A DNA stretch of 64,000 bases from the IMG/VR virus record IMGVR_UViG_3300032236_002285, positions 124,001-188,000 of that record, one strand, 5' to 3'. Numbering within the stretch: the first letter of the stretch is position 1; every line of letters starts with the position of its first letter. This document shows, in pieces, positions 8,971-57,976 of the stretch. The notes beneath the pieces were generated by a model that ran no database searches, was not told the DNA's origin, and saw nothing but the letters and a program-made list of their open reading frames with translations. A program made the translations under genes and the position numbers.

Positions 8971-9042
8971 GGTCGGGTGACCGAGTGTTTTAGGTGGAGG
9001 CCTGCAAAGCCTTTAACGGTGGTTAGAATCCATCCCCGACCT
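8971..9042 (+). tRNA. tRNA-Cys (GCA), CCA not encoded
   Basis: Acceptor GGTCGGG/CCCGACC, D stem ACC/GGT, anticodon stem GAGGC/GCCTT with loop CTGCAAA (GCA at 9004-9006), T stem GGTGG/CCATC, discriminator U73 as expected for Cys. Confidence 0.92.
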
Positions 9043-22909: not shown

Positions 22910-22937
22910 TTTATAAATTAAATTTAATATATACATT

Positions 22938-23327: not shown

Positions 23328-23769
23328 ACTTCTTCTTTTCTTTTTTCTTTGTTTCTATAAATTCAATACCTTCAATACTTTTTACATTTTCACCTAATTC
23401 AAAGTGGTGTAGCGTATTTAATACTGATATAAATTTTATTTTTTTGTAGTCTTTTTCAATTTTAGCTAGTCTATCCAACATATTGATAAGTGTTTCACCA
23501 TCATAGTGGCAAACTAAATTTAACGGATCGATAACAACATAAGATAGTTTGTTTTGAAAAAGTCCACCGTGACTTAATATTTCAAATTCCAAATCAACTA
23601 AAAAAGAATTTTTAAAGGCAGTAACTTCTAAGTTTTTGTTTTTTAACTCTAACGACTTTATACTTTTATCAAAATCTAGCGCAAAGTATAAACATTTTTT
23701 ACTTAAATCTATTAGACTAAGTGCTTTAGAAGATTTTCCGGAATTAGATTCACCATGAATAACTACCAT
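23314..23769 (-). CDS. minimal RecA/KaiC-like P-loop NTPase
   Basis: VIHGESNSGKS Walker A, YFALD, YVVIDP Walker B; only 151 aa. Confidence 0.6.
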   Translation of the reverse strand: MVVIHGESNSGKSSKALSLIDLSKKCLYFALDFDKSIKSLELKNKNLEVTAFKNSFLVDLEFEILSHGGLFQNKLSYVVIDPLNLVCHYDGETLINMLDRLAKIEKDYKKIKFISVLNTLHHFELGENVKSIEGIEFIETKKKEKKKFITL

Positions 23770-24206
23770 TTTATGTAATGTTTAACTATGTTATATGTGT
23801 TTTGATGTAAATAAAAGTGATTTACTATCAAATACAAATATAAACATAATCTACTTAATAAAAAAGTAAATGAGAATAATTTGTGAAGTATTGAAAACTT
23901 AAATGGTTTTAATATGATATTAAGCAAGTATGATATAGATAATACTACACCAAATAAATACCAACTAGTTGTAAAAAATCCACCTATAATCCAGAGTAAT
24001 TCAAATAAGCCAAGTATACCGATTGACTCTGATAAAGAATATTCAGTTTTACTTCTATATTCTTTTTTTGATGGTTTTTTACCGGTGATTTTTTCATATT
24101 TTTCTTTCCATTCACTTATTGAATAAATTTTTCTAAATTTTAGAATAATTGATAACACAGAAAGTAATACTAAAACGCCTATTAAATAATATATATTTCC
24201 TAGCAT
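23763..24206 (-). CDS. membrane protein
   Basis: Four hydrophobic segments. Confidence 0.7.
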   Translation of the reverse strand: MLGNIYYLIGVLVLLSVLSIILKFRKIYSISEWKEKYEKITGKKPSKKEYRSKTEYSLSESIGILGLFELLWIIGGFFTTSWYLFGVVLSISYLLNIILKPFKFSILHKLFSFTFLLSRLCLYLYLIVNHFYLHQNTYNIVKHYIKW

Positions 24207-24299
24207 GATTATTATATTTATTAAATATCGATTGTTTCCTTTTAAGAAACAGAAGGTGTAAATAATTATATATAGATAATAAAATTAATTGACAATTAA

Positions 24300-27029: not shown

Positions 27030-27074
27030 GTGTCTTTAATTTTTAATATATAAGTTAAAATAAAAAGATACATT

Positions 27075-28250
27075 ATGGGAGTTACATGTGGTGCAAGTCT
27101 ATTCGGTAGTAATAACAACCAATTTATTAAAACTAATGGTGGCGATTTTATAGCTGTTGATGGTTCGGGTACCAGAGAAAGACTTATTCTGTCAGATTTA
27201 AGAATACCTTACAAACAAATTCTAAAAAGTAGAATCATACTTAAAGTAGGACAAACAAATTATTTACTTAATTTTTTAGGATTAGGTGATAATGCTACTT
27301 TTCTTTGCATGAGAGCAAGGTATGATAGTAAATCTGTTATTGAAGCCGATAATTATATAAACTGGAGTTATGCAGATGATTTAACTAGAGTTAATTATTT
27401 TGCTGATATGATGGTTTTAACAGGCAATTCAACAAATAGAGTTCCTCAATTGTATCTTACAAATCCAAGTACCAAATATGCTGTTTCTATTGATATTATG
27501 GTTGGTATTATAGATGATTCTTATTCAATATTTACAGACACTTTAAATCAAAGTGGTACATCATTTGTTAATCTTGAATATACTGATATTCATAGTCATA
27601 TTATTGGTGAATCTATTGTTATTAATGATAAGAGTTCTCCTGTAAAACCTTTAATTTATATTAGATTAAGTGATATTAATTCTATTGAAAGAAGTGGTCA
27701 AATTTTAATTATTGACGATTCAAGCTTAGGTATTATTTTCTTACAATTCTTAACATTAAATGATACTTATCAAGCTCACTCGTTATTAAACTATGTTTTA
27801 CAACATCCAAATACAAATATAGATACTTTACAACCAACGGTTGCTGATTACGCGGATCCTGTTCTTTATTTCTATGGAAATGTTGGTAATACCGCAAGTG
27901 GTGATTATATCACATTTAGTGGTGCTACAACAAGTATTCCTTATAATACATCTCAAGGATTTACATTCTCAACATCTATTTCGTTGGGAACATTTGGTAC
28001 TGGTAGTACTGGTGGTTCAGCAAGTGCTTATTTGGATAAATCACAATTAATTTATTTACTAGTTGATCATATCACAGATAATAGAGATGGTAGTATGTAT
28101 ATGTTACCTTCTAATATAATAATATCAGGTACTGGTGGAAGTGTTAGTAATATTGCAGCTGCTGGCACTTATTCATTAGCATTTGATTTCTCTGATATAG
28201 CTCATAACTATTTAGATGGTGTAATAGTAAACCTTAATATAACTGCTTAA
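27075..28250 (+). CDS. putative structural protein
   Basis: 391 aa, beta-rich, AATATATA 27045-27052 upstream. Confidence 0.6.
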   Translation: MGVTCGASLFGSNNNQFIKTNGGDFIAVDGSGTRERLILSDLRIPYKQILKSRIILKVGQTNYLLNFLGLGDNATFLCMRARYDSKSVIEADNYINWSYADDLTRVNYFADMMVLTGNSTNRVPQLYLTNPSTKYAVSIDIMVGIIDDSYSIFTDTLNQSGTSFVNLEYTDIHSHIIGESIVINDKSSPVKPLIYIRLSDINSIERSGQILIIDDSSLGIIFLQFLTLNDTYQAHSLLNYVLQHPNTNIDTLQPTVADYADPVLYFYGNVGNTASGDYITFSGATTSIPYNTSQGFTFSTSISLGTFGTGSTGGSASAYLDKSQLIYLLVDHITDNRDGSMYMLPSNIIISGTGGSVSNIAAAGTYSLAFDFSDIAHNYLDGVIVNLNITA

Positions 28251-28267
28251 AAAATTAAAATAAAAAG

Positions 28268-30181
28268 ATGATTTTTAGTTACAATACATTTTTGAGACCG
28301 GTAACACCAACTGATAATAATATTCAAATATTAGATAATAATGGTGTTGTTGTTTATACAATAAACCCATTTTCTATAGGAACTACAAGAGTTTCAAATA
28401 ATGTTTTAGAAATATCTTTTAAAAGTGGTAAAACAATACCTCTTCAATTTTCTTCTCAAAATGAAGCTAAAGTGGCTTTAAGTTTACTTCAGTCACAAAT
28501 TGATATACTTTTAACAAAGACTCCAACCGTTATTGATACTCAAATTAAAAACTACATTGAATATGTAGTTAGTTTAAGTAGCTCTTCTGGTACATCAGGT
28601 AGCTCAGGTTCAAGTGGTTCTTCAGGTGTTGATGGTACATTTTATGGTTCGTCAGGCTCTTCCGGTATTAATGGTACTTCAGGTATTAATGGTACTTCAG
28701 GAGTTAATGGCACCTCTGGTCATAATGGTACCTCAGGTGCTAACGGTACATCGGGATCTGATGGTACATCCGGACACAATGGGTTAAATGGTAGCTCAGG
28801 TACATCGGGGACATCAGGCATTTCTGATATTTTACATGGTACATCTTCTACTTATCTTTCGGTTCCAGATGTTGAAGAGTTTGTATTTTTAACAACACAA
28901 CCTGGTTTAGGTTTTTCAACAAATCAAACAGTTGTTGTTTTTGATGATGTTAATGGTTACGCTAACTATTATTATATTGATGGTGATGATACTTTAGGTA
29001 TATTTTATGGTTATATTGACTCTTATGATCAGCAAACAGGTGACATGAGTATTTACACAGCTTTATCTTTTAATGTTGGTTCAACATCAAGTAATTGGGG
29101 TATCAATTTAGCTGGTATACCTGGATCGAGTGGTTCAACTGGTGTATCTGGTACATCTGGTTCAAGTGGCACATCTGGTCACTCTGGTACTTCTGGTTCA
29201 AGTGGATCATCAGGGACTTCTGGTTTAAATGGCTCTTCGGGTACATCTGGATCAAGTAGCACATCTGGATCAAGCGGCACATCGGGTAGCTCAGGATCAA
29301 GTGGGTCAAGCGGATCATCAGGAACTACATCAACTGGTCCTCAAAACTATACTCAAGTTTTAGGATCAAAAGTAACTGGTGTAACAACCACAGGCGTCAC
29401 TCTTGTTTCTGGTAGTATTACTACAAATGGTGGACCTGTTAGTATTACAGCTACTGGTGATGCAAACCCTCAAGGTGGCACAGCTTGGGTAAGATTGCAA
29501 ATATACAGAAATAGCACACCAGTTGGTCAAATAATACAAGCTGAGAATGGTTCAAATTTAAATATACCTTATTGTGTTACATTTATTGATACACCAAGTG
29601 CAGGTACTTATACCTATTCAATGAGAACTGTTAGTGGTATAGCTGGAACATTGGACTTTGGTGAAGTTAATGGTCCAACACTAACTATGATTGAATTAAC
29701 GGGTTCTGGTACATCTGGATCATCAGGTTCTGCTGGTACATCAGGTAGTTCGGGTACTTCACCATCAACAGATTTAACATTAAGTGGAAATTTAGTTGTT
29801 AATGGTCAATCAACATTTACAGAGGTAACAGAGGTTATCAATCAAATACCAGCTGGTGCTACTGCTTCAACTGTTACATATGATTTCAGTAATGGTGATA
29901 TTTGGTATCATGGAACAGCTTCTCAAAACTTTACAGCTAATTTTATAAATGTACCTACTACAACTTGGAGAACAATTACTACTACAATTTTAATTAATCA
30001 AGGTCCTACTGCTTATATACCAACTACTGTAAAAATAAATGGTACTGCTTCTACTGTAAAATGGGCAGGTGGAACTGCTTCAGGTACAGCTAATGGAGTT
30101 GATATAATTGGATTTAGTTTTATCTATACAAATAGTGGTATTCCTACTCAAGTGTTAGGTCAAATAAATTCATTTAGTTAA
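28268..30181 (+). CDS. tail fibre-like protein with Gly-X-Y (SGT/SGS/NGT) repeats
   Basis: Three tracts of SGTSGSSG / NGTSG triplet repeats separated by globular domains. Confidence 0.7.
   Translation: MIFSYNTFLRPVTPTDNNIQILDNNGVVVYTINPFSIGTTRVSNNVLEISFKSGKTIPLQFSSQNEAKVALSLLQSQIDILLTKTPTVIDTQIKNYIEYVVSLSSSSGTSGSSGSSGSSGVDGTFYGSSGSSGINGTSGINGTSGVNGTSGHNGTSGANGTSGSDGTSGHNGLNGSSGTSGTSGISDILHGTSSTYLSVPDVEEFVFLTTQPGLGFSTNQTVVVFDDVNGYANYYYIDGDDTLGIFYGYIDSYDQQTGDMSIYTALSFNVGSTSSNWGINLAGIPGSSGSTGVSGTSGSSGTSGHSGTSGSSGSSGTSGLNGSSGTSGSSSTSGSSGTSGSSGSSGSSGSSGTTSTGPQNYTQVLGSKVTGVTTTGVTLVSGSITTNGGPVSITATGDANPQGGTAWVRLQIYRNSTPVGQIIQAENGSNLNIPYCVTFIDTPSAGTYTYSMRTVSGIAGTLDFGEVNGPTLTMIELTGSGTSGSSGSAGTSGSSGTSPSTDLTLSGNLVVNGQSTFTEVTEVINQIPAGATASTVTYDFSNGDIWYHGTASQNFTANFINVPTTTWRTITTTILINQGPTAYIPTTVKINGTASTVKWAGGTASGTANGVDIIGFSFIYTNSGIPTQVLGQINSFS
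28585..28820 (+). repeat. coding Gly-Ser-Thr triplet repeat tract 1 (tracts 2 and 3 at about 29120-29330 and 29705-29765)
   Basis: Degenerate 9/18-nt units such as AATGGTACTTCAGGT. Confidence 0.85.
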
Positions 30182-30182
30182 T

Positions 30183-32267
30183 ATGATATCAAGAATTAGT
30201 AACTTTTCAGGACCTTTATCACCAGCTTTTAGAATACTAGTTGGTGGATTTACAACTGATGGATTAATTTTAAGATATGAAATATCTGATAATAATTCAT
30301 ATTCAGGTACTAATATTATTACCGACTTAGCTTTTAATAGTAATGCCACATTATATAATGGTCCAACATATTCTATAAACGGCTACATAAATTTTGATGG
30401 TGCTAATGATTATTTACTTACAAACACATCACTCAATTCTAAATTATCACCGATTAATACATCATCTATAATATCACATTTTATTTGGATTTATCCAACT
30501 GATAATGGTGTTATTGTTTCTGAACAAGGAAATCCACCATTAAATTCAGGTTGGCATGATTCTCAAATTGAAATAGTTGCTGGAAATTTAAAATTTGGAT
30601 TATGGCAATCTCCTGGTGGTGTATCAAGTCTAAACTCATCAATTACAACTCCATTTTATAATTGGTATTATGTTGGTCTTACTTATGATGGTGCTATAAT
30701 GAGAGGTTATGTAAATGGTCAATTTGCTGGTTCTAAATCGGTTTCAAGGTGGACACCATATAATAACGGAGGAGGTGTTGGATTAAACTATGCTATTGCT
30801 GCTAATGATGTTACAAGTTTAGGTGATGGTAGTCCAGCTAAAATGAAGTTAGGTGCTTTTCATGTTTATAACACAGCTCTTAGTCAGCAACAAGTTCTTA
30901 ATAATTACAATTATACTAAATCTGATTATATTTATACTGGTAGTATGTCTATTTGGCTTGATGCTAATGATCCAGAAAGTTTCTCAGGTGGTTTAGTTAA
31001 TGATTTAAGTGGTAATAATTATACACATACTCTAACATCAGGTGCTACTTCATCTACAATATTTGGTTTTAAATCTTTTGACTGTACCACTGGACTTAAA
31101 AGAATTGAAGTTAATGGTACAGGACCTACACTACCAACAACTGGATATACATATGTTGTATGGGCACGACTTATAAGTGATAATTTCTCATCATATAGAA
31201 CTTTACTTTATACAAACATATCAGGTGATAAATATACACCAATTACTGTTCCCAATGGGACAAATACATTAGGATGGTGGGATAGAAGCGCCGGTCAGTT
31301 CAGATCTTCTGGGTATGGTCTAACATCTTCTGTTGATGTTTGGGTCCAATATGCTGTTGTTGGTGATAGTTCTTCACAAACATACTATATAAATGATACA
31401 CAAGTAGGAAACTCAGTTCCTTACGGTATTAGTGGCACAACTACACATTGGGGATTAGGTAATAATGCTATAGCTGGTCAACCTTTTGGTTATGTTGGAA
31501 ATATGATGTTTTATAGTAAGAAACTAGCACTGAGTGAGATTAAACAAAACTATGATGCCTTAAAGCATGTTTATGTTAATGGAAATTTTGTAATTAATAA
31601 TTTAAGACTTTATTTTAATCCAGATAGTTATTTAAGTTATCCAGGCTCTGGAACAACTGTTAATGATTTAAGTGGAAATTCATTAAATGGTACAATTTCA
31701 AATATTACTTTTAATAAATCATATTTTACATTTAATGGTTCTAATTCACAAATTGCTATTGCTGATAATGCTTTATTAGAGTCCGGCTCAGGAGATTGGA
31801 CTATGGAGTCTTGGTTTAATACTAACACCAGTTCCGGAAGTCAAGTTGTTTTAGGTAAATTTAGTGGAGGTAACTCATCTGATGTTTCTTATTCTATAAG
31901 AATTAGTGGTACATCATTATTCTCTCAAATTGGTAATGGATTGGGTGGTACATTAAATGTAAACTATGCTAATTCTACATCTTATACAATAAATACCAAT
32001 ACATGGTATCAAATTGTTTACGTTTATTCAAATAGTACTGATACTTTCAAAACTTATATAAACGGTAGTTTGATAGGTTCTATTTCTTGTACTATTGGTA
32101 ACCTACTTAATAACTCAGCAAATTTATACATAGGTTCATTTAATAATGGTCAGTTTGCTCAATATTTTAGTGGTCAAATTGGTATAGTAAGATTATATAG
32201 CTCTGCTTTAAGTGATTCTGATGTTTCTAAAAACTTTGAAGCAAGTAGAAGTATCTATAGTATTTAA
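30183..32267 (+). CDS. tail protein with three LamG/concanavalin-A-like domains
   Basis: Three repeats of L...D...SY.G.G..V.DLSGN...; FDGANDY; WY.V..TY...YVNG; Y..ALS..EI.QNY. Confidence 0.8.
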   Translation: MISRISNFSGPLSPAFRILVGGFTTDGLILRYEISDNNSYSGTNIITDLAFNSNATLYNGPTYSINGYINFDGANDYLLTNTSLNSKLSPINTSSIISHFIWIYPTDNGVIVSEQGNPPLNSGWHDSQIEIVAGNLKFGLWQSPGGVSSLNSSITTPFYNWYYVGLTYDGAIMRGYVNGQFAGSKSVSRWTPYNNGGGVGLNYAIAANDVTSLGDGSPAKMKLGAFHVYNTALSQQQVLNNYNYTKSDYIYTGSMSIWLDANDPESFSGGLVNDLSGNNYTHTLTSGATSSTIFGFKSFDCTTGLKRIEVNGTGPTLPTTGYTYVVWARLISDNFSSYRTLLYTNISGDKYTPITVPNGTNTLGWWDRSAGQFRSSGYGLTSSVDVWVQYAVVGDSSSQTYYINDTQVGNSVPYGISGTTTHWGLGNNAIAGQPFGYVGNMMFYSKKLALSEIKQNYDALKHVYVNGNFVINNLRLYFNPDSYLSYPGSGTTVNDLSGNSLNGTISNITFNKSYFTFNGSNSQIAIADNALLESGSGDWTMESWFNTNTSSGSQVVLGKFSGGNSSDVSYSIRISGTSLFSQIGNGLGGTLNVNYANSTSYTINTNTWYQIVYVYSNSTDTFKTYINGSLIGSISCTIGNLLNNSANLYIGSFNNGQFAQYFSGQIGIVRLYSSALSDSDVSKNFEASRSIYSI

Positions 32268-32342
32268 AGTTTTTATCTACTCAAATTGATAAAATTATAT
32301 TTTATAATTTAATATATACCTTATAAAAATAATTAGACAAAA

Positions 32343-35300
32343 ATGGGTTTAGTATTAAGAACTTCACATATGCCTATGCCAATAGGAGCAACCGTATCTA
32401 ACCATAGATTAACAGTTGAGCAAATGGATAACAACTTTATCTTTTTGCAAAATTTATCACATAGTATATCACCTTTAACCGTTAGTGAGGCAAAAGATTT
32501 AATGTCTTCATCTGGGGTTGTAACTGGTCAGTTCTATTTAATCACAGATGCTGCTCCTTATTTATATGGCACACAGAGTGATTTTGGGTTTGGAGATGGT
32601 ACAAATATAATTGTTCAAGGTTTAGATGAAAATACATTTTCTACAAATGGTTGGGGTAAGTTTTATAACCCTAAATATAACGATTATGATGTTTGGGATT
32701 ACGGAGCTTCTTATAGCGTAAGTTCTATTGTTATTTATGGTGGTCGTGTTTGGCATAAGGCTACCAGTACAGGTAATGATGGTAGTAATGATTACTTGAA
32801 TCTTGATACTGACTGGGTTCCATTGTCTCATCTTGATGAAACATATTATAATGTTGTTTGGGATGAAATCGAACATATTATTGATGCTGAAGTTTATGGG
32901 TATGGTGATCCAATTTCTTTTATATCTTCTAGATATGATGCTAGAAATAATAACTTAGTTAAAAATAATCTTGCTGTTTTATTTTATTACTGTCAAATGG
33001 ATCCTATTCAAGGATTTAGATGGGGTCACGATTTAAATTTGATAGATAATAAAGGTGTTGGTAATTGTGAGGTTATTAACTCATACTTGGGTTGTTTGAA
33101 TTTTGTCTCAGGTTCAATTTATGATATTTATTTAACAGGATTTTCTCATATTTATGATATAAATTTAAGATCTTCTTCACTTTACGGTATTAAACTAAGT
33201 AATAATTCGGGTTTACATAATTTTAGTGTTGTTGATGGTTCAAGTATTTATGGTGTTGAGATAGATAATGATTCTAGCTTTTATAACTTTGATATAAGTG
33301 GTTATATATCAAACGTTAAAATATCCAATAACTCTGATATACATAATTTTGCCTTAGAAGGTTATATGAATGATATAACAGTTGAGAATAATTCTGTAAT
33401 TAATTTAGATAATGAGTTATATGGTACATTTGAATCTATATTGGTTAGTAATTCTTCATCTTTTAATAGTATCTACCTAGATAACAATAATTCAATTTCA
33501 AATATTACTGTAAGTGATGGCTCGGAATTTTCAAATGTAAGTTTATATGATAATTCATATATTGAATATGTAGAGGTTCGCCTTAATTCTAATTTTGGAT
33601 ATATGAATTATTATAATGATGCTTATGTTGAGAACATTATATGTGAGAATGAGAGTTCAATAGGTTATGCTAGTCTATATGATACTAACTTGGATTCTAT
33701 TAAAGTTAGTAATGATTCCTATATTGAATTTAATAGTAATTTATATGGTGGTTATTTATATGGAATTGATATGACAAATGACTCTTCAATCTATGACTTA
33801 TCAATGACAGCTTCTTCTTATATTGACACTGTTAGAATGGATAATGGTTTAATTCAAAATATAGAGATGACTAATAGTGGTTATTTGGAAACATTAACTA
33901 TAGAAACAAACTCTTATATAGAAAACTTGTACCTTGATAACTCATATATTCAATATGTTAATATTTCTGAAAATTCTAGTATTTCTTACTTACAAGATGA
34001 CTATGGGATGTACAATTCATATTTGACCTATATTGAAATATCAAATAATTCGGCTATTGCTTATACATATATGGATAATTCATATATGGAATATATTAAA
34101 CTTACCAATGAATCATATATAGGTGGTTTATTTTTGAATAGAAATAATAGCACATCCGAGTCTTATCTTTCAAATATTGATTTAACAAATAACTCATATA
34201 TATCTGATGATGATGATACTATCTATCTTGATAAAGGTTCTTATTTCCAATATGTAAATTTGGAAAATAACTCATATATAACTGGTTATATGAAATTAAT
34301 TAGTTCAAATTTAAGTAATATAACACTTACTAATGATTCTTATATTGATGCTGGTTATCATGCTGATGGTGACAATGTTGATAATTATGGTAATTATAGC
34401 TATAAAATGGAGTTACATAACTCTAATATATCTCAGTTAACACTTAATAACAACTCATATGTAGGATATGGTCATATATCTTTAACAGCTTCATCTGCTA
34501 TATACAATGTTACTTTAGACAACTTCTCTTATATTAGAAGCTGGATATCATTAGATGATTCTGGTATGGGTCATTTCTCATTAACTAACCACTCTAAATT
34601 TGGTAAAACAAGTAGCAATGGTTCAATTGAATTATATAATGGTTCGGCTATTGAATACTTAACTATGGATAATGCACTATTAGATGGTTTTATTTATATG
34701 GATAACTCATCTATGATACAAGTTAATTTAAATGGTTTGCCTAATCCAGATGATGGTAATTTTGGTAATAGTAATTATTCAAACTACTATGATTTTGATA
34801 TCAATAGCGCAACATTTGGTGAGGATATTGAATTATATGATTCGTTCTTACAGGATATACAAGTTTCTAATGGTGGTCACTTTGGTGGTAATTATGGTAG
34901 CATTTATCTTGAATCTAACTCATTTATGAGATCTATAAAATTAGATAATGGTTCTATTTTCACAGATGTTTATTTAGGTAAGTCAAGAATGGAGTATGTA
35001 GAAGTAACTAACGGTTCTTATATCTATAATATAGATTTAGAAGGTACTGATGGTTCATCAATTACATATTTAACCGTTAATAACTATTCATATTTTGGTG
35101 ATTATATTTATTTAGATAATGCTTCAATGCAATTTATTGAAATTGATAATAACTCACAACTACAAGGTAGTAATCACGGTGATGGTGATATTAGTTTGTA
35201 TAGCGGTTCTTATTTAGAAAATATTAAATTATCTAACTACTCTCAAATTACAGGACCTTTATCTTTACATGACACTTCATATTTTACTTTAATTGAGTTA

Positions 35301-37382
35301 AGTAACTATTCTCAAATTACTGGTGCTAATAACGAAATTCAATTACATAGTGGATCTTACTTTGAAGCAATTAAATTAGATACTGAATCTGCTATAACAG
35401 CATATGATACTGATAATATTTACTTATCATCTTCTGATATTAGTAGTATTGACTTATCAAATCGTTCAACATTCTTTGGAGATGTTTCTCTTTATGATGG
35501 TTCTTATATGAGAAACTTTAATATCACAAATAATTCATCATTTGGTGGTGGTATTTACTTAGGAGATTCTGGTGCTGGTTACATCACTAACCTATCAATA
35601 GATAACAATAGTCAATTTGTTGGCTATATAGATAATGATAGTATTAATTTATATAATGGCTCTACAATTGATAGTGTTAAATTATCTAATGATTCAGCAT
35701 TTACTGGTTATATAGAAATGGGTGAAGGTTCTTACTTTACAGATATTTCTATTGAAAATAACTCTTATATAAGTGGTGATATTTACATCTATTTAGGTTC
35801 TACCGTTAAAAATATTAATATACTAAATGATTCTTATATCGAGGGTTACATGGATATTTATGGTGGTTATGTTAATGATATTAATATTAGTAACTACTCA
35901 TTTATGGGTAATACAACTGAACAAGGTGGTATAAAAGTATATAATAATGCCACATTGGAATATATTACAATTAATAATTATTCAAGATTTAATAGCGTTT
36001 ATTTAACTGATTCTAATACTAAGTTTTACTATGTAAGCTTAAATAACTATTCATATATTGACCCTAATACTAATTTTTATGGCAACTCTTATTTAAATTT
36101 GAGTAGTGCCTCTGAGATGAAGTATATTGAGTTAGATAACCACTCTCATATTAAAGGAAATCTTTTGTTATCTGCTTCTTATATTAAGAGACTACAAATG
36201 GCTAACTATTCTAAAATTGATGGTGATAACTATCTTTCTAATTCACATATTCAGTATTTCTCAATGTTGAATGTTAGTGATAACTCTGGTCAATCTTGCT
36301 ATGGTCCAGGCTTTAACAATTTCTATTTAAGTAATAGTTATATGGAAGGCATCGATCTTAAATGGTCAACTATGGCTGGTTTAACTATAGAGAATAGTTC
36401 TACAATAGAAGGTTTACAAGTATCTAATAGTGGTATATTTAATACACAATTATATAACAACTCTCATATCTATTCAACCAAGATTAATGATTCTTATATT
36501 GATGGTAATGTTAATTACAGTAATGGTTATAGATATGGTGGATTATATTTAGATAGTTCATCAATTATAGCTAGTGTTGATTTTAATGATGTTGGATTCC
36601 CTAATTGGAATGATAGTGAAAATGGTATCTACTTACATAACTCATCTTTTACTAATATATCTTGGAATGATGCTTATACTCAAAGAGTTGTAGCTACTTC
36701 TTCTAATATTGATTCACTTACGTTATTAAGTAACTCTTATTTGGGATATGTTAATTTAAGTGATTCTAATATATATGCTAGTGAGTTAAAAATATCATCA
36801 TTGGATACAATATCTCTTAATAATGCTACCTGGTTTGGTTTATTCTTGAAACAATCTACTATATATGATTATAGACCATCGAGTGGGTTAGATATTTACA
36901 ATCTTGATATGACTGGTTCAGAATTTAACTTAGGTAATACATCAGATACTTATGATTTTAACGAAACATTTGCTCAATATAACACTATAAAACATCAGTT
37001 CGAGTTTAATTTTAGTGGTTCAACTGGTAATGGTGCGGTTGGCTTAGTTGATATTCCAAGAGTTCTAGTACCTGGTGATTATTGGTATATAGAAAAAGTA
37101 ATATTAGACTCAACTAACTTAACAACTTCTGGCACAGCTTCTTTAAGTTTAGGTATTCAAGATACCGATTCTGATTGTGGAGTTGACCATGCTCTTGTTA
37201 GTGATTTGAATAATAGAGTTAGAGTTTTTGATTTATCAAATGGCTTGGCGAATGGTGCTAAATCTTATTCACATGCTATTGACCAAATATCAATGAATGT
37301 TCACACTGCTAACATAACAGGTGGAAATATTAAGGTAGAAGTTACCCTTAAAAATACAAATTATTATAACAGCAATGACTAA
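32343..37382 (+). CDS. 1679-aa long beta-helix tail fibre/spike
   Basis: N-term LTVEQMDNNF.FL fibre-type motif; very long run of about 10-11-residue repeats (I.NI.L.N.SYI). Confidence 0.7.
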   Translation: MGLVLRTSHMPMPIGATVSNHRLTVEQMDNNFIFLQNLSHSISPLTVSEAKDLMSSSGVVTGQFYLITDAAPYLYGTQSDFGFGDGTNIIVQGLDENTFSTNGWGKFYNPKYNDYDVWDYGASYSVSSIVIYGGRVWHKATSTGNDGSNDYLNLDTDWVPLSHLDETYYNVVWDEIEHIIDAEVYGYGDPISFISSRYDARNNNLVKNNLAVLFYYCQMDPIQGFRWGHDLNLIDNKGVGNCEVINSYLGCLNFVSGSIYDIYLTGFSHIYDINLRSSSLYGIKLSNNSGLHNFSVVDGSSIYGVEIDNDSSFYNFDISGYISNVKISNNSDIHNFALEGYMNDITVENNSVINLDNELYGTFESILVSNSSSFNSIYLDNNNSISNITVSDGSEFSNVSLYDNSYIEYVEVRLNSNFGYMNYYNDAYVENIICENESSIGYASLYDTNLDSIKVSNDSYIEFNSNLYGGYLYGIDMTNDSSIYDLSMTASSYIDTVRMDNGLIQNIEMTNSGYLETLTIETNSYIENLYLDNSYIQYVNISENSSISYLQDDYGMYNSYLTYIEISNNSAIAYTYMDNSYMEYIKLTNESYIGGLFLNRNNSTSESYLSNIDLTNNSYISDDDDTIYLDKGSYFQYVNLENNSYITGYMKLISSNLSNITLTNDSYIDAGYHADGDNVDNYGNYSYKMELHNSNISQLTLNNNSYVGYGHISLTASSAIYNVTLDNFSYIRSWISLDDSGMGHFSLTNHSKFGKTSSNGSIELYNGSAIEYLTMDNALLDGFIYMDNSSMIQVNLNGLPNPDDGNFGNSNYSNYYDFDINSATFGEDIELYDSFLQDIQVSNGGHFGGNYGSIYLESNSFMRSIKLDNGSIFTDVYLGKSRMEYVEVTNGSYIYNIDLEGTDGSSITYLTVNNYSYFGDYIYLDNASMQFIEIDNNSQLQGSNHGDGDISLYSGSYLENIKLSNYSQITGPLSLHDTSYFTLIELSNYSQITGANNEIQLHSGSYFEAIKLDTESAITAYDTDNIYLSSSDISSIDLSNRSTFFGDVSLYDGSYMRNFNITNNSSFGGGIYLGDSGAGYITNLSIDNNSQFVGYIDNDSINLYNGSTIDSVKLSNDSAFTGYIEMGEGSYFTDISIENNSYISGDIYIYLGSTVKNINILNDSYIEGYMDIYGGYVNDINISNYSFMGNTTEQGGIKVYNNATLEYITINNYSRFNSVYLTDSNTKFYYVSLNNYSYIDPNTNFYGNSYLNLSSASEMKYIELDNHSHIKGNLLLSASYIKRLQMANYSKIDGDNYLSNSHIQYFSMLNVSDNSGQSCYGPGFNNFYLSNSYMEGIDLKWSTMAGLTIENSSTIEGLQVSNSGIFNTQLYNNSHIYSTKINDSYIDGNVNYSNGYRYGGLYLDSSSIIASVDFNDVGFPNWNDSENGIYLHNSSFTNISWNDAYTQRVVATSSNIDSLTLLSNSYLGYVNLSDSNIYASELKISSLDTISLNNATWFGLFLKQSTIYDYRPSSGLDIYNLDMTGSEFNLGNTSDTYDFNETFAQYNTIKHQFEFNFSGSTGNGAVGLVDIPRVLVPGDYWYIEKVILDSTNLTTSGTASLSLGIQDTDSDCGVDHALVSDLNNRVRVFDLSNGLANGAKSYSHAIDQISMNVHTANITGGNIKVEVTLKNTNYYNSND

Positions 37383-41779: not shown

Positions 41780-42214
41780 ATGGAAAAACCAAGTAAAGAA
41801 GATATAATGAAAAAATGGGCTCCTGTTTTAGAGTCTATGGGTATGACTGGATCTCAATTGGATAATTTATCACAACTAACCGAAAATCAACCAAATCAAA
41901 TATTAGAAGAAACTAAAACTGAAGAGTTTCCAAGTTTATTACCAATAGCTATGAGGGTAGCCGCTAGAACAATATCAAATGATTTAATATTTGCTTCACA
42001 AGAAGAAATTGACCAAGTTAAAAAGAAAGTTCAATCTGAAAATCGTGATGGTAAGATTGAAGCCATTATAGAAGATAAAGAATTTACTGAGAAGAAATTA
42101 GAAGATGATGAAGAGTATAAGGAATTGATGAAAAAAGGTGTTAAACCTATGTCGGCACCTTCAGGAACTTTATTCTATTTAGATTATAAGTATGGAGGAG
42201 ACAAAGATGAGTAA
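41780..42214 (+). CDS. mini protein resembling the N-terminal part of a T4 gp23-type major capsid protein
   Basis: KEDIMKKWAPVLESMG, LLPIAMRVAARTI, KPMSAPSGTLFYLDYKYG; about 144 aa; internal RDGKIEAII helix. Confidence 0.7.
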   Translation: MEKPSKEDIMKKWAPVLESMGMTGSQLDNLSQLTENQPNQILEETKTEEFPSLLPIAMRVAARTISNDLIFASQEEIDQVKKKVQSENRDGKIEAIIEDKEFTEKKLEDDEEYKELMKKGVKPMSAPSGTLFYLDYKYGGDKDE

Positions 42215-42392
42215 ATATGTAAGTCCTGGAGTTTATATTAAAGAAACTGATTGGAGTGGTATTTATCCAGTATTTCAAAGAAATCTTTTAAGAAAGAATA
42301 AAATAGCTAAAATCTTTGGTTTAGATGTTAGATCGCTTATTATAACTTCAACTCCAAAAGGTCCAAATAATTTTCCAATTATTGCTTGGTGA
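42207..42392 (+). CDS. 61-aa chimera: tail-sheath N-terminal motif, RKNKIAKIF helix, terminase motif-III-like segment
   Basis: MSKYVSPGVYIKETD...LRKNKIAKIFG...LIITSTPKGPNNF; ATG 42207 overlaps upstream stop (ATGAGTAA). Confidence 0.7.
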   Translation: MSKYVSPGVYIKETDWSGIYPVFQRNLLRKNKIAKIFGLDVRSLIITSTPKGPNNFPIIAW

Positions 42393-42421
42393 GGAACATG
42401 AGTGTATAATATATACTCATA

Positions 42422-42754
42422 ATGATTACCGTTTATCTTATATGTGCTGAATTTGACGGCACAAGATTATTTAAAATAGGACATACTCGTAGAAGAGTAG
42501 AAGAAAGAATGAAAGAGTTTAGAACGGGAAATGGCTCTGATCTTTATATAGTCAATCAGTTTAAATCTAAATGGGGCACTAAAATAGAAGCTCAACTTCA
42601 TAGAAGATTCAATTCAAAAAAAGCTAATGGTGAGTGGTTCGCCTTAGATGATGATGATGTGATGGAATTTAAACCTTATTGTGAACTAGCACATAATAAC
42701 TTTGAATTAATAACTACACAAAATAGTTGGTACTTAGAAAGAGGTAAATTCTAA
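42422..42754 (+). CDS. GIY-YIG-related T5orf172/MUG113-like protein
   Basis: VYLI...FKIGHT...EERMKEFRTGN...E.QLHRRF...GEWF. Confidence 0.8.
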   Translation: MITVYLICAEFDGTRLFKIGHTRRRVEERMKEFRTGNGSDLYIVNQFKSKWGTKIEAQLHRRFNSKKANGEWFALDDDDVMEFKPYCELAHNNFELITTQNSWYLERGKF

Positions 42755-43675: not shown

Positions 43676-45424
43676 ATGTTAATTAGTGAATTAGGAATTA
43701 GAGGATTCAAGTCTTATGGCAATAACGAACAAGTATTAAAATTAAACACAGAAAAAGGAGAATTAATTCTCCTTGTTGGAAATAATGGAGCTGGTAAATC
43801 ATCTCTTTTAGATTCCTTCGATTACACACTTTATGGTAAAGTTAGAGGTCGTAAAAAGAAATGGGCCACTTTATCAACACTTCCAAACAGAATTAACGGT
43901 GAATTACTTAATAGAATTAAATTTAATTCTTTAGGTACCGACGTTGAAATCAAACGTGGTATTTCACCAAGCGTATTAGAACTCATTGAAAATGGAGTAA
44001 CCAATGAAAGAGCTGGTAAAGGAAACATTGATGAAAAGATTGAAAAGTATATCGGTATGGATATTGAAACTTTCAAATCATTTATCTCAATGTCTATCAA
44101 TGACTTCAAAAACTTTATCTCTTTATCAAATGAAGAAAAACAACTTCTTTTAGACAAGTTATTTAACTTAGAAGTTATCAATATATTAAATGGTATCTTA
44201 AAAGATATTGCTAAGAGTAATAAAACCAAAGCCGCTTCTTTTGATGCTGAAATTAGAACTTTAGATGACTCTATAGCTTCTATTCAAAGGTCTATTGATA
44301 AAGCCATTGAAAGACAAAAAGAAGAAGCCAGACTAGCCTTAGAACGTGAAAAAGAAGATATTCAATCAGAGATTGATAGAATCACAAATGAGATGAATTC
44401 CAGAAAAGATGATTATAAGTCTTTGAAAGAAAAGATGGATAAAATCAAAGAAAAAGATTCTGAACTTTCTGATGAGATGGATAAAGAAAAAAGACAACTT
44501 ATCAACTGTCAGAATGATATTAAGAATGTTCAAAAAGAATTAGATTTGTATGATTCTGGTAAATGTCCAACTTGTAAAACAGATTTTGATTCAGTTCACT
44601 TTGCTAATTTAAGAACGGCTTTAGAAGAAAAGAAATTAGGCTTTGAAAATATCAAAGCTGAAATTGAAGCCAATGTTACTAAAGTAAGAGAAAGGCAAGC
44701 TAAGTTAAAATCTTTATCAGAAACTACAACAACTACTTTTAATGATTTAAGTTATTTATTGAAGAATTATAAATCAGAGATTGATAAATTAACTCAAAAG
44801 AAAGCTAGTCAAACTGCACCGGTTAATACTACACCTTCTGTCGATATTCAAGAGTTTAAAAATACAATTGATGAACTTGAAGAAAAGAAAGTCATCAGTA
44901 CTGATAAAATTACTGAGTGTAAAGAAAAAGATCTTTACTACAAAGAGTTAAATAGAATTTTTGGTGAAGATGGTGTTAAGAAATCTATCATTTCTGGTAT
45001 TATCAAACCAATCAATCACTTTATTGCTGAGAATATCAAAAAGATGGGTTTACCATTTGAAGTTAAGTTAGATGAGACTTTTACAGCTGAGATTAAACAA
45101 TTAGGTTCTCAAATTGAACACGATTCTTTATCAACTGGTGAAACTAAAAAAGTAAATATTAGTATCTTAATTGCTTACTTGAAATTGATTAGAACTAAAC
45201 GTCATATCAATATTCTCTTCTTAGACGAGGTTTTCTCATCTATTGATATAGAAGGTATAGATTCTATTTTAGCACTCTTAAAATCGTTTGCAAACGATTA
45301 TAACATCAATATCTTTGTTGTTCACCATGCTATTTTGAATCAAGAGATGTTTGATAGAATATTGAAGATTAACAAAGAAGTCTTTTCTTCAATAGAAGAA
45401 GTAAATCTTAACTATGGAAATTAA
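43676..45424 (+). CDS. SbcC/Rad50/gp46-like SMC ATPase
   Basis: GNNGAGKS Walker A, long coiled coil, CPTC zinc hook, LSTGE signature, LFLDE Walker B, VVHH. Confidence 0.92.
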   Translation: MLISELGIRGFKSYGNNEQVLKLNTEKGELILLVGNNGAGKSSLLDSFDYTLYGKVRGRKKKWATLSTLPNRINGELLNRIKFNSLGTDVEIKRGISPSVLELIENGVTNERAGKGNIDEKIEKYIGMDIETFKSFISMSINDFKNFISLSNEEKQLLLDKLFNLEVINILNGILKDIAKSNKTKAASFDAEIRTLDDSIASIQRSIDKAIERQKEEARLALEREKEDIQSEIDRITNEMNSRKDDYKSLKEKMDKIKEKDSELSDEMDKEKRQLINCQNDIKNVQKELDLYDSGKCPTCKTDFDSVHFANLRTALEEKKLGFENIKAEIEANVTKVRERQAKLKSLSETTTTTFNDLSYLLKNYKSEIDKLTQKKASQTAPVNTTPSVDIQEFKNTIDELEEKKVISTDKITECKEKDLYYKELNRIFGEDGVKKSIISGIIKPINHFIAENIKKMGLPFEVKLDETFTAEIKQLGSQIEHDSLSTGETKKVNISILIAYLKLIRTKRHINILFLDEVFSSIDIEGIDSILALLKSFANDYNINIFVVHHAILNQEMFDRILKINKEVFSSIEEVNLNYGN

Positions 45425-47224: not shown

Positions 47225-47413
47225 ATGCTAGAAATTAAAGTAGAAGGTGTTGGTATTGAAAAAGCCTTAAAAACACTTAAAAGAAAATTTGACAAAACTA
47301 AAACTCTTAGACAATTAAGAGATAGAAAAGAATTTGTTAAAAAATCAGTTAAAAGAAGAGCTGAAATAAACAAAGCTAAATATGTTCAAGAAAAGTTTGG
47401 TAACAACGATTAA
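47225..47413 (+). CDS. rpsU: 30S ribosomal protein bS21
   Basis: IEKALKTLKRKFDKTKTLRQLRDRKEFVKKSVKRR...KAKY resembles Bacteroidota bS21. Confidence 0.92.
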   Translation: MLEIKVEGVGIEKALKTLKRKFDKTKTLRQLRDRKEFVKKSVKRRAEINKAKYVQEKFGNND

Positions 47414-47693
47414 GAATTTATTCAGTGATAATCAAAGAACATTTGATTTAGGTAAACTACAAAAGGTTGGTTTTATAAAACCTTTAGAAGATCTATCTGG
47501 TTGTCCTAATTGTAAAAGTAAAAACATATCTTGGAAGTTCTTTATACCAGTAGATGGCTCAAAACCTACACAACCATCTTTATCTATCTGTAAAGATTGT
47601 GGATATCAAGATATAAGAGGTGAATTTGAAAAAACAAACAAATCATTACTTAGAGAAAAGAAAATTAATAAGATATTAGATGGGATTCAATAA
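47382..47693 (+). CDS. zinc-ribbon protein with REKKINKIL helix
   Basis: CPNC...CKDC. Confidence 0.7.
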   Translation: MFKKSLVTTIKNLFSDNQRTFDLGKLQKVGFIKPLEDLSGCPNCKSKNISWKFFIPVDGSKPTQPSLSICKDCGYQDIRGEFEKTNKSLLREKKINKILDGIQ

Positions 47694-57247: not shown

Positions 57248-57810
57248 TGTCACATATATCAATTATTGATTGGATTACGGCTTTACTAATAGCATTGCCT
57301 TTATTTACTTTGTTTATTTCAATTCCAAGTTTTGTTGCTATGTATAAACTTGGTTTCAAAGCTTATCGTCAACAACTTCGTGTTTTGAAAATTATGAATC
57401 GTAAGATATCAAGTGGTTATAAAGTCATACATAATCAAGTTTATACATATGCTGGAACGGGTTATAATGTGCCAAATACAGTAACTAGAGTTGAAACTAA
57501 TCATTTTTTCCCAATTGTTATTGATAAAGACCATTTAATAATCTTAACAAAGAAGGAAGGACCTTTCAATACACTTTATATGCAATATTGTGAATTTAAA
57601 AATAAAGAATGGTCAAATGACAATATTGAAATAAAAACTTCAACTTGTTTATTTACTCAACTTCTTAATGATAGATTTCAAAAAAAAGTTGATAATCTTA
57701 TGAAAGAATCTGTTCAAATTGAAGGTGTTGAAAATCTAAACGAGTTATTAAATAGCCAAATAACTTCTATCAAAAGAGAAGAAGTATTAAATTCTATATT
57801 AAATGGATAA
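57247..57810 (+). CDS. membrane-anchored hypothetical protein, C-terminal REEVLNSIL helix
   Basis: N-terminal TM segment. Confidence 0.7.
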   Translation: MSHISIIDWITALLIALPLFTLFISIPSFVAMYKLGFKAYRQQLRVLKIMNRKISSGYKVIHNQVYTYAGTGYNVPNTVTRVETNHFFPIVIDKDHLIILTKKEGPFNTLYMQYCEFKNKEWSNDNIEIKTSTCLFTQLLNDRFQKKVDNLMKESVQIEGVENLNELLNSQITSIKREEVLNSILNG

Positions 57811-57976
57811 GAAAGATATTGTTATAGTAGATTATTTTACTAAACTAACAACTACTGAGCTTTCTGATGATGGTATTGAGGCATTTCGGAAATTAAACTT
57901 TCGTGTTTTAAATATTCGCAAGTGGAGAGGAAAAATAGAAAGACGAAAAGAAAAAATTAAAAGAATCTATGGATAA
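57803..57976 (+). CDS. 57-aa micro-protein: SF4 helicase Walker-B-like segment plus RKEKIKRIY helix
   Basis: Not in ORF track; manual translation MDKKDIVIVDYFTKL...IERRKEKIKRIYG*; ATGGATAA overlaps at both ends. Confidence 0.7.
   Translation: MDKKDIVIVDYFTKLTTTELSDDGIEAFRKLNFRVLNIRKWRGKIERRKEKIKRIYG

What the first reader, a model, noticed from the sequence alone, without database searches (positions are those of the whole stretch)
42207..42392. 61-aa chimera joining a tail-sheath N-terminus to a terminase coupling motif
MSKYVSPGVYIKETD matches the contractile sheath start (T4 gp18 LLSPGIELKET). After the shared helix comes LIITSTPKGPNNF, matching terminase motif III (T4 gp17 IITTTPNGLNHF). 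Motifs from two unrelated structural/packaging genes in one tiny ORF, coupled to the mini-capsid gene, are hard to explain as decay of a single gene. This suggests selected multi-epitope mimicry.
Basis: partly seen in the sequence, partly recalled or inferred. Interest (0 to 1): 0.85.

Follow-up and report, generated by a model that had tools for sequence, protein, structure and literature searches.

The report
Mini tail-sheath gene, not a chimera
This tiny phage gene is a conserved, cut-down copy of the first ~60 residues of the phage's own tail-sheath protein with an extra basic helix. Its likeness to a terminase motif is a look-alike, so it is an unexplained "mini-sheath", not a two-gene chimera.

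Summary
The ORF (42207-42392, +) is real. Its start overlaps the stop of a 144-aa N-terminal paralogue of the major capsid protein.

It is conserved. There are 10 close homologues and 55 clusters (one representative per 50%-identity cluster) of 32-152-aa proteins, plus one 418-aa repeat protein that looks spurious. Every contig examined shows the same locus, in relatives of 634-642-kb uncultured phages. pN/pS is 0.58 (CI 0.41-0.83).

**Sheath half: holds.** The family profile aligns colinearly with the first ~70 residues of the clade's real 1283-aa sheath (hhalign 97%, E 7e-11).

**Terminase half: fails.**
- IITSTPKGPNNFP aligns with the sheath's own second N-terminal block, VIGVSKKGPVNTP.
- Longer family members continue into the sheath's DF..IFG block at the same spacing.
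- On this segment alone the sheath scores E 3.5e-5 and terL 6.5e-3, close to a reversed-sequence control (0.014).
- The clade's terL motif is nearly invariant (IIITSTPNGMNLFH) and lacks KGP, NNFP and IW.

The gene is therefore a "mini-sheath": sheath N-arm, an inserted basic helix, then the next sheath strand-loop.

Function is unknown. My best guess is a strand-complementing partner or modulator of the sheath lattice, co-made with the mini-capsid. The decoy idea is untested.

The parts
41780..42214 (+). Mini-capsid ORF (144 aa from ATG 41780; the ORF finder starts it at TTG 41774). It is a paralogue of the N-terminal ~110-150 residues of the T4-type major capsid protein, with an inserted charged segment. 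Its stop overlaps the next ORF's start.
   Evidence: Matches phrog_138 major head protein, E 6e-5. tblastn to the real MCP of LR756502 gives E 1.5e-6 (window copy), 6e-12 (LR756502 copy) and 6e-11 (reverse). Orthologues in L001/L002 score 3e-26/1e-23. Atlas neighbours are Gp23-bearing small proteins.
42207..42392 (+). The 61-aa 'mini-sheath' ORF (the finding).
   Evidence: Ten homologues. 55 representative clusters. hhalign to the real sheath N-terminus 97%, E 6.8e-11. pN/pS 0.58, CI 0.41-0.83.
42207..42263 (+). Residues 1-19: sheath N-arm block (SPGVYIKETDWS). It corresponds to RPGIFIEEFDQS of the real sheath.
   Evidence: hhalign of the N part alone against the sheath gives 94%, E 1.6e-7, against 0.47 for the reversed control. 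HMM domain 13.8 bits at sheath residues 6-25.
42279..42326 (+). Residues 25-40: basic helix (RNLLRKNKIAKIFGLD). It is an insertion relative to the real sheath and the most conserved block of the family (R29 invariant).
   Evidence: It appears as a gap in the sheath in hhalign. It is the only element AF2 models as a helix (H25-37). Conservation is shown. The same motif recurs at the C-ends of other small ORFs.
42336..42389 (+). Residues 44-61: second sheath block (LIITSTPKGPNNFPIIAW). It corresponds to MVIGVSKKGPVNTPIL of the real sheath. The window lineage is truncated here and lacks the DF..IFG block that longer homologues keep.
   Evidence: For the C part alone: sheath E 3.5e-5, terL 6.5e-3, reversed control 0.014. 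Synonymous changes occur at 5 codons of the motif, with amino-acid changes only in L026/L027 (I/V, P to S).
42398..42420 (+). Conserved hairpin just upstream of the T5orf172 start codon. The core TAATATATA is invariant, and the arms differ between relatives but remain complementary.
   Evidence: -9.1 kcal/mol and z -3.8 in the window. All 8 relatives fold, between -6.3 and -10.9 kcal/mol.
42422..42754 (+). 110-aa T5orf172/MUG113 (GIY-YIG-type) nuclease-domain gene. It is a neighbour, not part of the small protein, and is absent at this position in some relatives.
   Evidence: Pfam MUG113 2.6e-16 and T5orf172 1.2e-10. Absent in L029 and L030. Single copy in LR756502.

Best explanation
**What it is (shown).** The ORF encodes a small paralogue of the phage's own tail-sheath N-terminus. 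In order it contains:
- the sheath N-arm (PGVY.E.D.S);
- an inserted ~14-residue basic amphipathic helix (LRK.KI.KIF);
- the sheath's next strand-loop block (..I[TG].S.KGP.N.P).

Longer relatives add the following DF..IFG block. The window lineage is truncated before it. The gene is made from an ATG that overlaps the stop of a likewise truncated N-terminal paralogue of the major capsid protein. It is kept under moderate purifying selection across a clade of huge phages. The terminase likeness is convergent or chance.

**How it most likely works (inferred).** In contractile tails the sheath N-arm is a strand that plugs into the four-stranded 'handshake' sheet formed with neighbouring subunits. 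The fragment cannot form a sheath domain by itself, and AF2 models only the helix. It most plausibly acts by strand complementation on full-length sheath subunits. It could cap free handshake sites at an end of the sheath, or hold subunits back from premature polymerisation. The basic helix would be a handle for a further partner.

**Confidence by part.** Identity as a sheath-N-terminal paralogue and not a chimera: about 0.9. The strand-complementation mechanism: about 0.3.
For: **Colinear homology to the real sheath**
- The real sheath is 1283 aa and carries Pfam Phage_sheath_1 at 7e-8.
- hhalign gives 97%, E 6.8e-11 over 67 columns.
- The close family alone gives 91%, E 1e-6.
- Each half matches separately: N part 1.6e-7, C part 3.5e-5, against reversed-sequence controls of 0.47 and 0.014.
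- The sheath N-terminus is the top non-orthologous hit among 15,995 ORFs of LR756502 (E 9e-4).
- Longer members (P0004, P0139, P0147, P0163, P0171, P0176) continue KGP.N.P, 11 residues, then IFG, as in the real sheath.

**Conservation and selection**
- Searches show the family's breadth.
- The same locus order appears in every contig looked at.
- The start always overlaps the mini-capsid stop.
- pN/pS is 0.58 with bootstrap P(>=1)=0.001, and 0.43 in the C block.
- Synonymous variation occurs inside the invariant motif.

**Mechanism**
- The role of the N-arm in the handshake sheet, and the fact that the terminator and the sheath initiator complete that sheet with strands of their own, are described in 10.1101/2021.12.18.469577 and PMC13450770.
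- AF2 gives no compact fold: mean pLDDT 66, helix 25-37 only.
Against: - There is no direct evidence that the protein is made or that it binds sheath.
- Selection is only moderate (pN/pS about 0.6).
- The C-terminus varies a lot between lineages.
- The LR745206 orthologue has lost the PGVY block but keeps the helix, so the helix, not the sheath-like arms, may carry the function.
- P0155 carries an IITSTP.G.NNW block and a separate GPVNKP...DF..IFG block, so the exact column-to-column equivalence of the disputed block is not certain.
- The gene does not lie in a recognised tail-assembly module. It sits between fibre-like genes and an SbcC-like gene.
Confidence: 0.6

Rival explanations
1. One reading: a true chimera whose N half comes from the sheath gene and whose C half was captured from terL motif III, selected as a multi-epitope mimic.
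For: - IITSTP.G.N.F is shared with the clade's terL (9 of 12 residues; 18 of 20 nt over IITSTP).
- terL ranks third of 15,995 ORFs in the family HMM search (E 0.076).
- The close family against terL gives hhalign 50%, E 1.6e-4.
- T4 gp17 is tied for top PDB hit.
Against: - With the wider family the terL match falls to 2%, and to 5.9% on the segment alone, about the same as a reversed control.
- A chance eL22 hit scores the same in PDB.
- 120 clade terLs are almost invariant at IIITSTPNGMNLFH[RK]LL and lack KGP, NNFP and IW, which are sheath-like or match only T4.
- Distant family members read ILSISPKGMISQP, TSKTSKKGPSNQP and IIVGT...PP, which are sheath-like and not terL-like.
- The nucleotide identity is what identical residues and AT-rich codon use would give.
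Confidence: 0.05
2. Mimicry without chimerism: the mini-sheath and mini-capsid are made as decoys or antagonists. They would occupy host sensors, or competitor assembly sites, that recognise the N-terminal parts of the sheath and major capsid proteins.
For: - Two N-terminal look-alikes of the two most abundant virion polymers are kept side by side with overlapping stop and start.
- They sit outside an obvious head or tail assembly module.
- Both retain the motifs conserved in the real proteins.
Against: - There is no hit to any defence or anti-defence model.
- To my knowledge no sensor of sheath N-termini is known.
- A 61-aa unfolded fragment is an unlikely mimic of a folded epitope.
- Nothing here bears on expression timing.
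Confidence: 0.12
3. The function is centred on the helix. The conserved basic helix is a tag or binding module (nucleic acid, membrane or a common partner). It is shared with other small proteins, and the sheath-derived parts are an evolutionary leftover.
For: - The helix is the best-conserved block (R29 invariant; K32, I36, F37 at 90% or more).
- It is kept in LR745206, where the PGVY block is lost.
- The same motif ends other small ORFs: window 57803-57973 and 3460-3633 (E about 0.006), and LR756502 277261-277443, which is fused to an MCP C-terminal piece (E 1.5e-4).
Against: - P7, G8 and E13 of the N-arm and the TSTPKGPNNF block are also strongly conserved, with synonymous-only variation.
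- Lys/Ile-rich helices are easy to get in a 29% GC genome, so part of the recurrence may be compositional.
Confidence: 0.15
4. A decaying remnant: a leftover of an old duplication or nuclease-mediated rearrangement with no function of its own. It would be kept only as a translated spacer that couples expression along the operon.
For: - pN/pS is only moderately below 1.
- C-termini are variable and truncated in many lineages.
- A mobile-type nuclease gene lies next to it.
- The related genome holds other scattered MCP pieces.
Against: - 55 clusters below 50% identity all keep the same start, the same blocks and the sheath-type residues.
- The bootstrap excludes neutrality (P=0.001).
- The ORF persists where the nuclease gene is absent.
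Confidence: 0.1

Closest known systems
Contractile tail sheath proteins (T4 gp18 type; here the clade's own 1283-aa sheath, LR756502 192324-196172)
   Same: It has the same N-terminal blocks in the same order: PG[VI][YF].E.D.S at the very N-terminus, then [IV][IV].[ST]..KGP.N.P, then (in longer members) DF..IFG at the same 11-residue spacing.
   Different: It has only ~60-100 aa. It lacks the sheath core (Phage_sheath_1) and the C-terminal domain, carries a ~14-aa basic helix the sheath lacks, and shares only 24-39% identity, whereas real sheaths of the clade are at least 77% identical over residues 1-140.
Tail terminator and sheath initiator proteins that complete the sheath 'handshake' sheet (e.g. 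phi92 gp129 and gp139; T4 gp15/gp25 class)
   Same: This is the proposed mode of action: a non-sheath protein supplies or accepts strands in the four-stranded inter-subunit sheet (PMC13450770).
   Different: No sequence relationship was shown or sought. Those are folded domain proteins with known positions in the virion. For this ORF binding is only inferred.
Terminase large subunit motif III / coupling motif (T4 gp17 IIITTTPNGLNHFYDIW; clade terL IIITSTPNGMNLFH)
   Same: It shares a short strand-turn string, IITSTP.G.N.F.
   Different: It has no Walker A/B motifs and no ATPase or nuclease domain. The profile match is no better than a reversed control. The residues that differ from terL (KGP, N.P) are the sheath's.
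Full-length structural paralogues such as the T4 vertex protein gp24 (paralogue of gp23) (own knowledge)
   Same: It is a duplicated structural gene retained alongside the original.
   Different: Here only N-terminal fragments are retained (mini-capsid and mini-sheath). They form a coupled pair and lie far from the parental genes, which in LR756502 are at 192-196 kb and 227-229 kb, against 316 kb for the pair.
Free-standing GIY-YIG/T5orf172 homing-endonuclease genes of phages (PMC10448857)
   Same: The downstream neighbour has the T5orf172/MUG113 domain and is present or absent between the same flanking genes. It is also preceded by a hairpin at its start codon, as I recall for T4 endonuclease genes (own knowledge).
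   Different: At 110 aa it is the nuclease domain only, with none of the Zn-finger DNA-binding domains usual in T5orf172 endonucleases. It is single-copy. It is not part of the small ORF.

Membership tests
Tail sheath protein family | N-terminal arm block PG[VI][YF].E.D.S at the extreme N-terminus | tested here: met
   hhalign of the N part against 20 real sheath N-termini gives 94%, E 1.6e-7. HMM domain at sheath residues 6-25.
Tail sheath protein family | Second N-terminal block (..[IV]G.S.KGP.N.P) followed by DF..IFG, colinear with the arm | tested here: met
   The whole-family alignment is colinear over sheath residues 3-69. The C part alone gives E 3.5e-5. The window copy has the KGP block but is truncated before DF..IFG.
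Tail sheath protein family | Sheath core domain (Pfam Phage_sheath_1) and C-terminal domain (Phage_sheath_1C) | tested here: not met
   The protein is 61 aa with no Pfam hit at E<=10. The real sheath of the clade has both domains. It is therefore a fragment paralogue, not a sheath protein.
Terminase large subunit (Terminase_6N) | Walker A/B ATPase core around motif III | tested here: not met
   No Pfam hit. Only a match of 10-19 columns to terL.
Terminase large subunit (Terminase_6N) | Motif III block matching terL profiles better than chance and better than alternatives | tested here: not met
   Family against terL gives 2%. The segment alone gives E 6.5e-3, against 0.014 for the reversed control and 3.5e-5 for the sheath. 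The motif in 120 clade terLs lacks KGP, NNFP and IW.
T4-type major capsid protein (Gp23) - for the coupled upstream ORF | Homology to the MCP N-terminal region (propeptide-like start, LLP.A.R.AA.TI..DL, P.G.LFY.D.[KQ]Y) | tested here: met
   tblastn to the real MCP of LR756502 gives 1.5e-6 to 6e-12. phrog_138 gives 6e-5.
T4-type major capsid protein (Gp23) - for the coupled upstream ORF | Complete HK97-type body (Pfam Gp23 above threshold) | tested here: not met
   Pfam Gp23 scores 13.6 bits against a cut-off of 24.4, covering residues 120-141 only. The protein is 144 aa, against 571 aa for the real MCP.
T5orf172 / GIY-YIG homing endonuclease - for the downstream ORF | Nuclease domain present | tested here: met
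   MUG113 2.6e-16, T5orf172 1.2e-10.
T5orf172 / GIY-YIG homing endonuclease - for the downstream ORF | Sporadic presence between conserved flanks; a DNA-binding domain; site-specific cleavage | tested here: inconclusive
   It is absent in L029 and L030 but present in all other contexts. No DNA-binding domain fits in 110 aa. Cleavage is not testable here.
Anti-defence decoy of structural-protein sensors (Avs-type or other) | Binding to, or inhibition of, a host sensor | not testable with these tools
   PADLOC scan found nothing for the small ORF or the mini-capsid. No family model exists for such decoys.

The most novel reading that the evidence does not exclude
Huge phages keep a translationally coupled pair of N-terminal look-alikes of their two main self-assembling virion proteins, a mini-capsid and a mini-sheath. 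Each carries an inserted charged helix. They would act as trans-acting mimics, either decoys for host sensors of those proteins or dominant regulators that time or cap capsid and sheath polymerisation. The recurring basic helix would be a common docking tag on structural-protein fragments.
Probability: 0.12. Interest if true: 0.75.

Novelty: new variant of a known kind. Interest (0 to 1): 0.4.

Why it matters
If the mini-sheath and mini-capsid are functional, they would be examples of phages re-using the exposed N-terminal arms of their own polymerising virion proteins as small trans-acting factors. No such class came up in the few literature searches I ran, and I know of none. That would bear on how very long tails and very large capsids are assembled in 600-kb phages, or on evasion of immunity that senses structural proteins.

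The practical lesson is narrower. A 12-residue likeness to a famous motif was not evidence of gene fusion. Widening the family and testing colinearity against the genome's own genes resolved it.

Tried and rejected
**Searches that found nothing useful**
- Pfam, PHROGs and PADLOC on the 61 aa gave no hits.
- tblastn against 50,697 phage records found only the LR756502 orthologue and chance hits.
- Rfam on the whole window found no intron or ribozyme, only a tRNA. A split gene or intron explanation was dropped.
- The window itself holds no sheath, terL or MCP. I fetched the related 642-kb genome piecewise instead.
- tblastn with Flavobacterium-phage terL and MCP did not bring up the huge phages in the listed rows.

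**Hypotheses tested and dropped**
- Dating a capture by nucleotide identity is not possible. Only 47-54% identity exists over the sheath blocks. The 67% over the terL block is what six identical residues in an AT-rich code give.
- Programmed frameshift fusion of mini-capsid and mini-sheath is rejected. The frame relation differs between relatives (+1 in the window, L004 and L023; -1 in L001 and L002) and the overlaps differ (4, 8 or 14 nt).
- Stop-codon recoding or read-through is rejected. The stop is TGA in the window but TAA in L004, and long ORFs are intact in code 11.
- Nuclease proliferation as the source of the fragments is rejected. There is one T5orf172 copy in LR756502.

- AF2 gave a low-confidence model (pLDDT 66), so no fold search was run.
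- Atlas feature hits for the small ORF were at chance level (0.82).
- The sigma-70 promoter scan found no more than shuffles do.
- RNAalifold found no consensus hairpin because the stems sit in different registers. Single-sequence folds were used instead.

Full report
**1. What is there**

The window is 28.9% G+C. Around the finding it is 70-73% identical in DNA to two uncultured phage genomes of 634,780 and 642,428 bp, LR745206 and LR756502. I recall these as part of the 'huge phage' metagenome set, but I did not verify this.

Its ATG lies inside the last codons of a 144-aa ORF (41780-42214). Thirty bases after its stop begins a 110-aa T5orf172/MUG113 gene (42422-42754; Pfam 2.6e-16). An upstream in-frame ATG at 42192 exists, but all relatives start at the position of 42207.

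**2. It is a conserved gene, not an accident of the window**

The word-indexed protein search found ten homologues of 58-73 aa (E 8e-32 to 3e-6). A profile search of 1.84 billion cluster representatives found 55 clusters. All are small proteins of 32-152 aa, apart from one 418-aa repeat protein that looks spurious.

In every contig I inspected the order is the same:
- a ~320-336-aa gene;
- a ~100-127-aa gene;
- a 145-166-aa capsid-like ORF;
- the small ORF;
- usually T5orf172;
- a ~90-aa gene;
- further on, an SbcC/Rad50-like gene.

The small ORF's start always overlaps the capsid-like ORF's stop, by 4, 8 or 14 nt. The frame relation differs between relatives, which argues against a programmed frameshift fusion.

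On three phylogenetically separate pairs pN/pS is 0.58. The bootstrap 95% interval is 0.41-0.83, and 0.1% of replicates reach 1. Inside the invariant TSTPKGPNNF block there are synonymous differences at five codons, and amino-acid changes only in L026/L027 (I/V, P to S). So the protein sequence, not just the DNA, is under constraint. The constraint is weaker than on the neighbouring T5orf172 gene (0.1-0.3).

**3. The parental genes**

The window contains no sheath, terminase or capsid gene. I therefore fetched LR756502 in 14 overlapping pieces plus one 18-kb stretch. In it I located three genes:
- the real sheath, 1283 aa, Phage_sheath_1 7e-8;
- terL, 712 aa, Terminase_6N 8.5e-19;
- the MCP, 571 aa, Gp23 3.7e-28.

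The real sheath begins MAVQIGKYKRPGIFIEEFDQSIISSPIVEGITNMVIGVSKKGPVNTPILLQTIGDLDSIFGQLD. terL motif III reads SKIIITSTPNGMNLFHRLL.

**4. The sheath half holds**

I searched an HMM of the ten close homologues against all 15,995 six-frame ORFs of LR756502. After the orthologue (1.6e-10) the best hit is the real sheath N-terminus (E 9e-4), with the ORF's N-terminus matching the sheath's.

Profile-profile comparison of 35 family members with 20 real sheath N-termini gives 97% probability, E 6.8e-11. It covers 67 columns and runs colinearly from ORF residue 2 to its end and from sheath residue 3 to 69. The only large gap is a ~14-residue segment present in the small proteins and absent from the sheath. 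The ten close homologues alone give 91%, E 1e-6.

**5. The terminase half does not hold**

The string likeness is real:
- IITSTP.G.N.F is shared with the clade's terL;
- terL is the third-ranked ORF in the genome search (E 0.076);
- T4 gp17 appears in a PDB profile search at E 0.23;
- the close family against terL gives 50%, E 1.6e-4.

Six observations count against homology:
- In the PDB search an evidently irrelevant protein, eukaryotic ribosomal protein eL22, scores the same 0.23 against the middle of the ORF.
- With the wider family the terL match falls to 2%.
- I cut the family alignment just before LIITST and compared only that C-terminal part. The sheath gives 72%, E 3.5e-5 over 29 columns. 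An alignment of 34 distinct clade terL segments gives 5.9%, E 6.5e-3. A reversed-sheath control gives 3.2%, E 0.014.
- Longer family members do not stop after the block. They continue as the sheath does, for example P0004 ...TSTPKGPNNFPKQINDIDHFEKIFGKL against sheath ...GVSKKGPVNTPILLQTIGDLDSIFGQL. Both have the same 11 residues between P and IFG. P0139, P0147, P0163, P0171 and P0176 behave likewise.
- In distant members the block reads ILSISPKGMISQP, TSKTSKKGPSNQP or IIVGT...PP, which are sheath-like and not terL-like.
- Among 120 terLs of the clade, motif III is nearly invariant (IIITSTPNGMNLFH[RK]LL). It never shows KGP, NNFP or the final IW.

The nucleotide likeness (18 of 20 nt) is what six identical residues give in this codon usage.

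One residual doubt remains. P0155 has an IITSTP.G.NNW block and, 17 residues later, a separate GPVNKP...DF..IFG block. So the exact equivalence of columns, or an internal duplication, is unsettled. Either way the material is sheath-like.

**6. The upstream partner**

The 144-aa ORF is an N-terminal paralogue of the T4-type capsid protein:
- phrog_138 at 6e-5;
- 30% identity to the first 100-146 residues of the real MCP of LR756502 (E 1.5e-6 to 6e-12);
- a charged ~50-residue insertion between the LLP.A.R.AA.TI..DL block and the P.G.LFY.DY.Y block.

Both small genes therefore have the same design: the N-terminal arm region of a self-assembling virion protein, interrupted by a charged helix and then truncated. 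LR756502 holds further scattered MCP-like pieces.

**7. How it may work**

AF2 with the 35-sequence alignment gives a poor model (mean pLDDT 66). Only residues 25-37 are helical and both sheath-like parts are extended. That is what one expects of pieces that need a partner.

In contractile tails the sheath N-arm pairs with a neighbour's C-arm. Together they extend a two-stranded sheet of a subunit in the next ring, forming the 'handshake'. The tail terminator and the sheath initiator complete this sheet at the two ends with strands of their own (10.1101/2021.12.18.469577; PMC13450770).

The most economical reading is that the mini-sheath uses its N-arm and strand-loop block to occupy such sites on full-length sheath. 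It would act as a cap or as a brake on premature polymerisation, with the basic helix as a second interface. This is inference only.

Alternatives I cannot exclude:
- a decoy for host sensors;
- a function carried by the helix alone;
- slow decay.

The helix-centred alternative deserves attention for three reasons:
- The helix is the best-conserved block.
- It survives in LR745206, where the PGVY block is gone.
- A helix-only profile finds the same [RK]K.KI.[KR]I[FLY] motif at the very C-terminus of other small ORFs in the window (57803-57973 and 3460-3633, E about 0.006 each). It also finds it in LR756502 (277261-277443, E 1.5e-4), where it follows a piece of the MCP C-terminus.

**8. The neighbour**

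T5orf172 is a GIY-YIG subfamily that includes phage homing endonucleases (PMC10448857). Four observations apply here:
- The gene is absent from the same position in two relatives (L029, L030), while the mini-capsid, the mini-sheath and, in L029, the following ~89-aa gene remain.
- It is single-copy in LR756502.
- It is only a nuclease domain.
- Between the small ORF's stop and its ATG lies a hairpin. The A/T core is invariant. The G/C-bearing arms differ between relatives but stay complementary, and they reach the start codon.

The small ORF is therefore not a leader peptide of the nuclease gene, since it persists without it.

**9. Verdict**

The chimera, the terminase capture and the 'multi-epitope' mimicry do not.
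- What remains is a previously undescribed family of mini-sheath proteins paired with mini-capsid proteins in a clade of huge phages. Its function is unknown.
- This is of moderate interest and is best classed as a new variant of a known kind.

Noticed in passing
window 42398-42420 (and the same position in L001, L002, L004, L023, L025, L026, L028): A conserved hairpin sits directly upstream of, and reaching, the T5orf172 start codon. The TAATATATA core is invariant. The arms differ between relatives but stay complementary (GAGT/ACTC, GGG/CCC, AGAG/CTCT, GAGTT/AACTC, GAAG/CTTC). All 8 fold, between -6.3 and -10.9 kcal/mol. It looks like translational occlusion of a nuclease gene.
   Followed up: partly
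window 42422-42754; L029 1006-1022; L030 around 1000: The 110-aa T5orf172/MUG113 gene is present in most relatives. It is missing after the mini-sheath in L029 and L030; in L029 the ~89-aa gene follows directly. This is a presence/absence pattern as for a mobile endonuclease gene. It is a nuclease domain only, with no DNA-binding domain.
   Followed up: partly
window 57803-57973, 3460-3633, 47370-47690; LR756502 277261-277443; L030 323-760 and 996-1187: A basic motif [RK]K.KI.[KR]I[FLY], the same as the helix inserted in the mini-sheath, ends several unrelated small ORFs. In LR756502 it follows a 35-aa piece of the MCP C-terminus. It may be a shared tag, or it may be compositional.
   Followed up: partly
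LR756502 80294-80431, 234714-235091, 277264-277368, 499652-502032 (L009, L012, L013, L018): Further MCP-like pieces or diverged MCP paralogues are scattered through the related genome, besides the real MCP at 227452-229164.
   Followed up: no
L029 775-1005 (P0147): This mini-sheath has an N-arm, MGKYKRPGIYIEEHD, almost identical to the real sheath's IGKYKRPGIFIEEFD, unlike the window type. This could reflect repeated capture or gene conversion from the real sheath gene. In the same contig the mini-capsid is split into two ORFs.
   Followed up: no
L030 323-760: A second, LR745206-type paralogue (RMRKISNIFKFDYD ... KFIIPIG ...) lies between the mini-capsid and the mini-sheath, so the small genes can be tandemly duplicated.
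   Followed up: no
window 17762-37382, 43676-45424, 8971-9042: The upstream neighbourhood holds very large ORFs (1715 and 1679 aa), a collagen-repeat protein (28268-30181) and a Laminin_G_3 protein (30183-32267), which look like tail-fibre genes. Downstream is an SbcC/Rad50-like gene. There is one tRNA at 8971-9042.
   Followed up: partly
L002 6913-7680 (-): LR756502 carries an HNH-type endonuclease-like ORF (255 aa, ...DIDHIIPIS...NLQPLC...) inserted in this syntenic block. The window lacks it.
   Followed up: no
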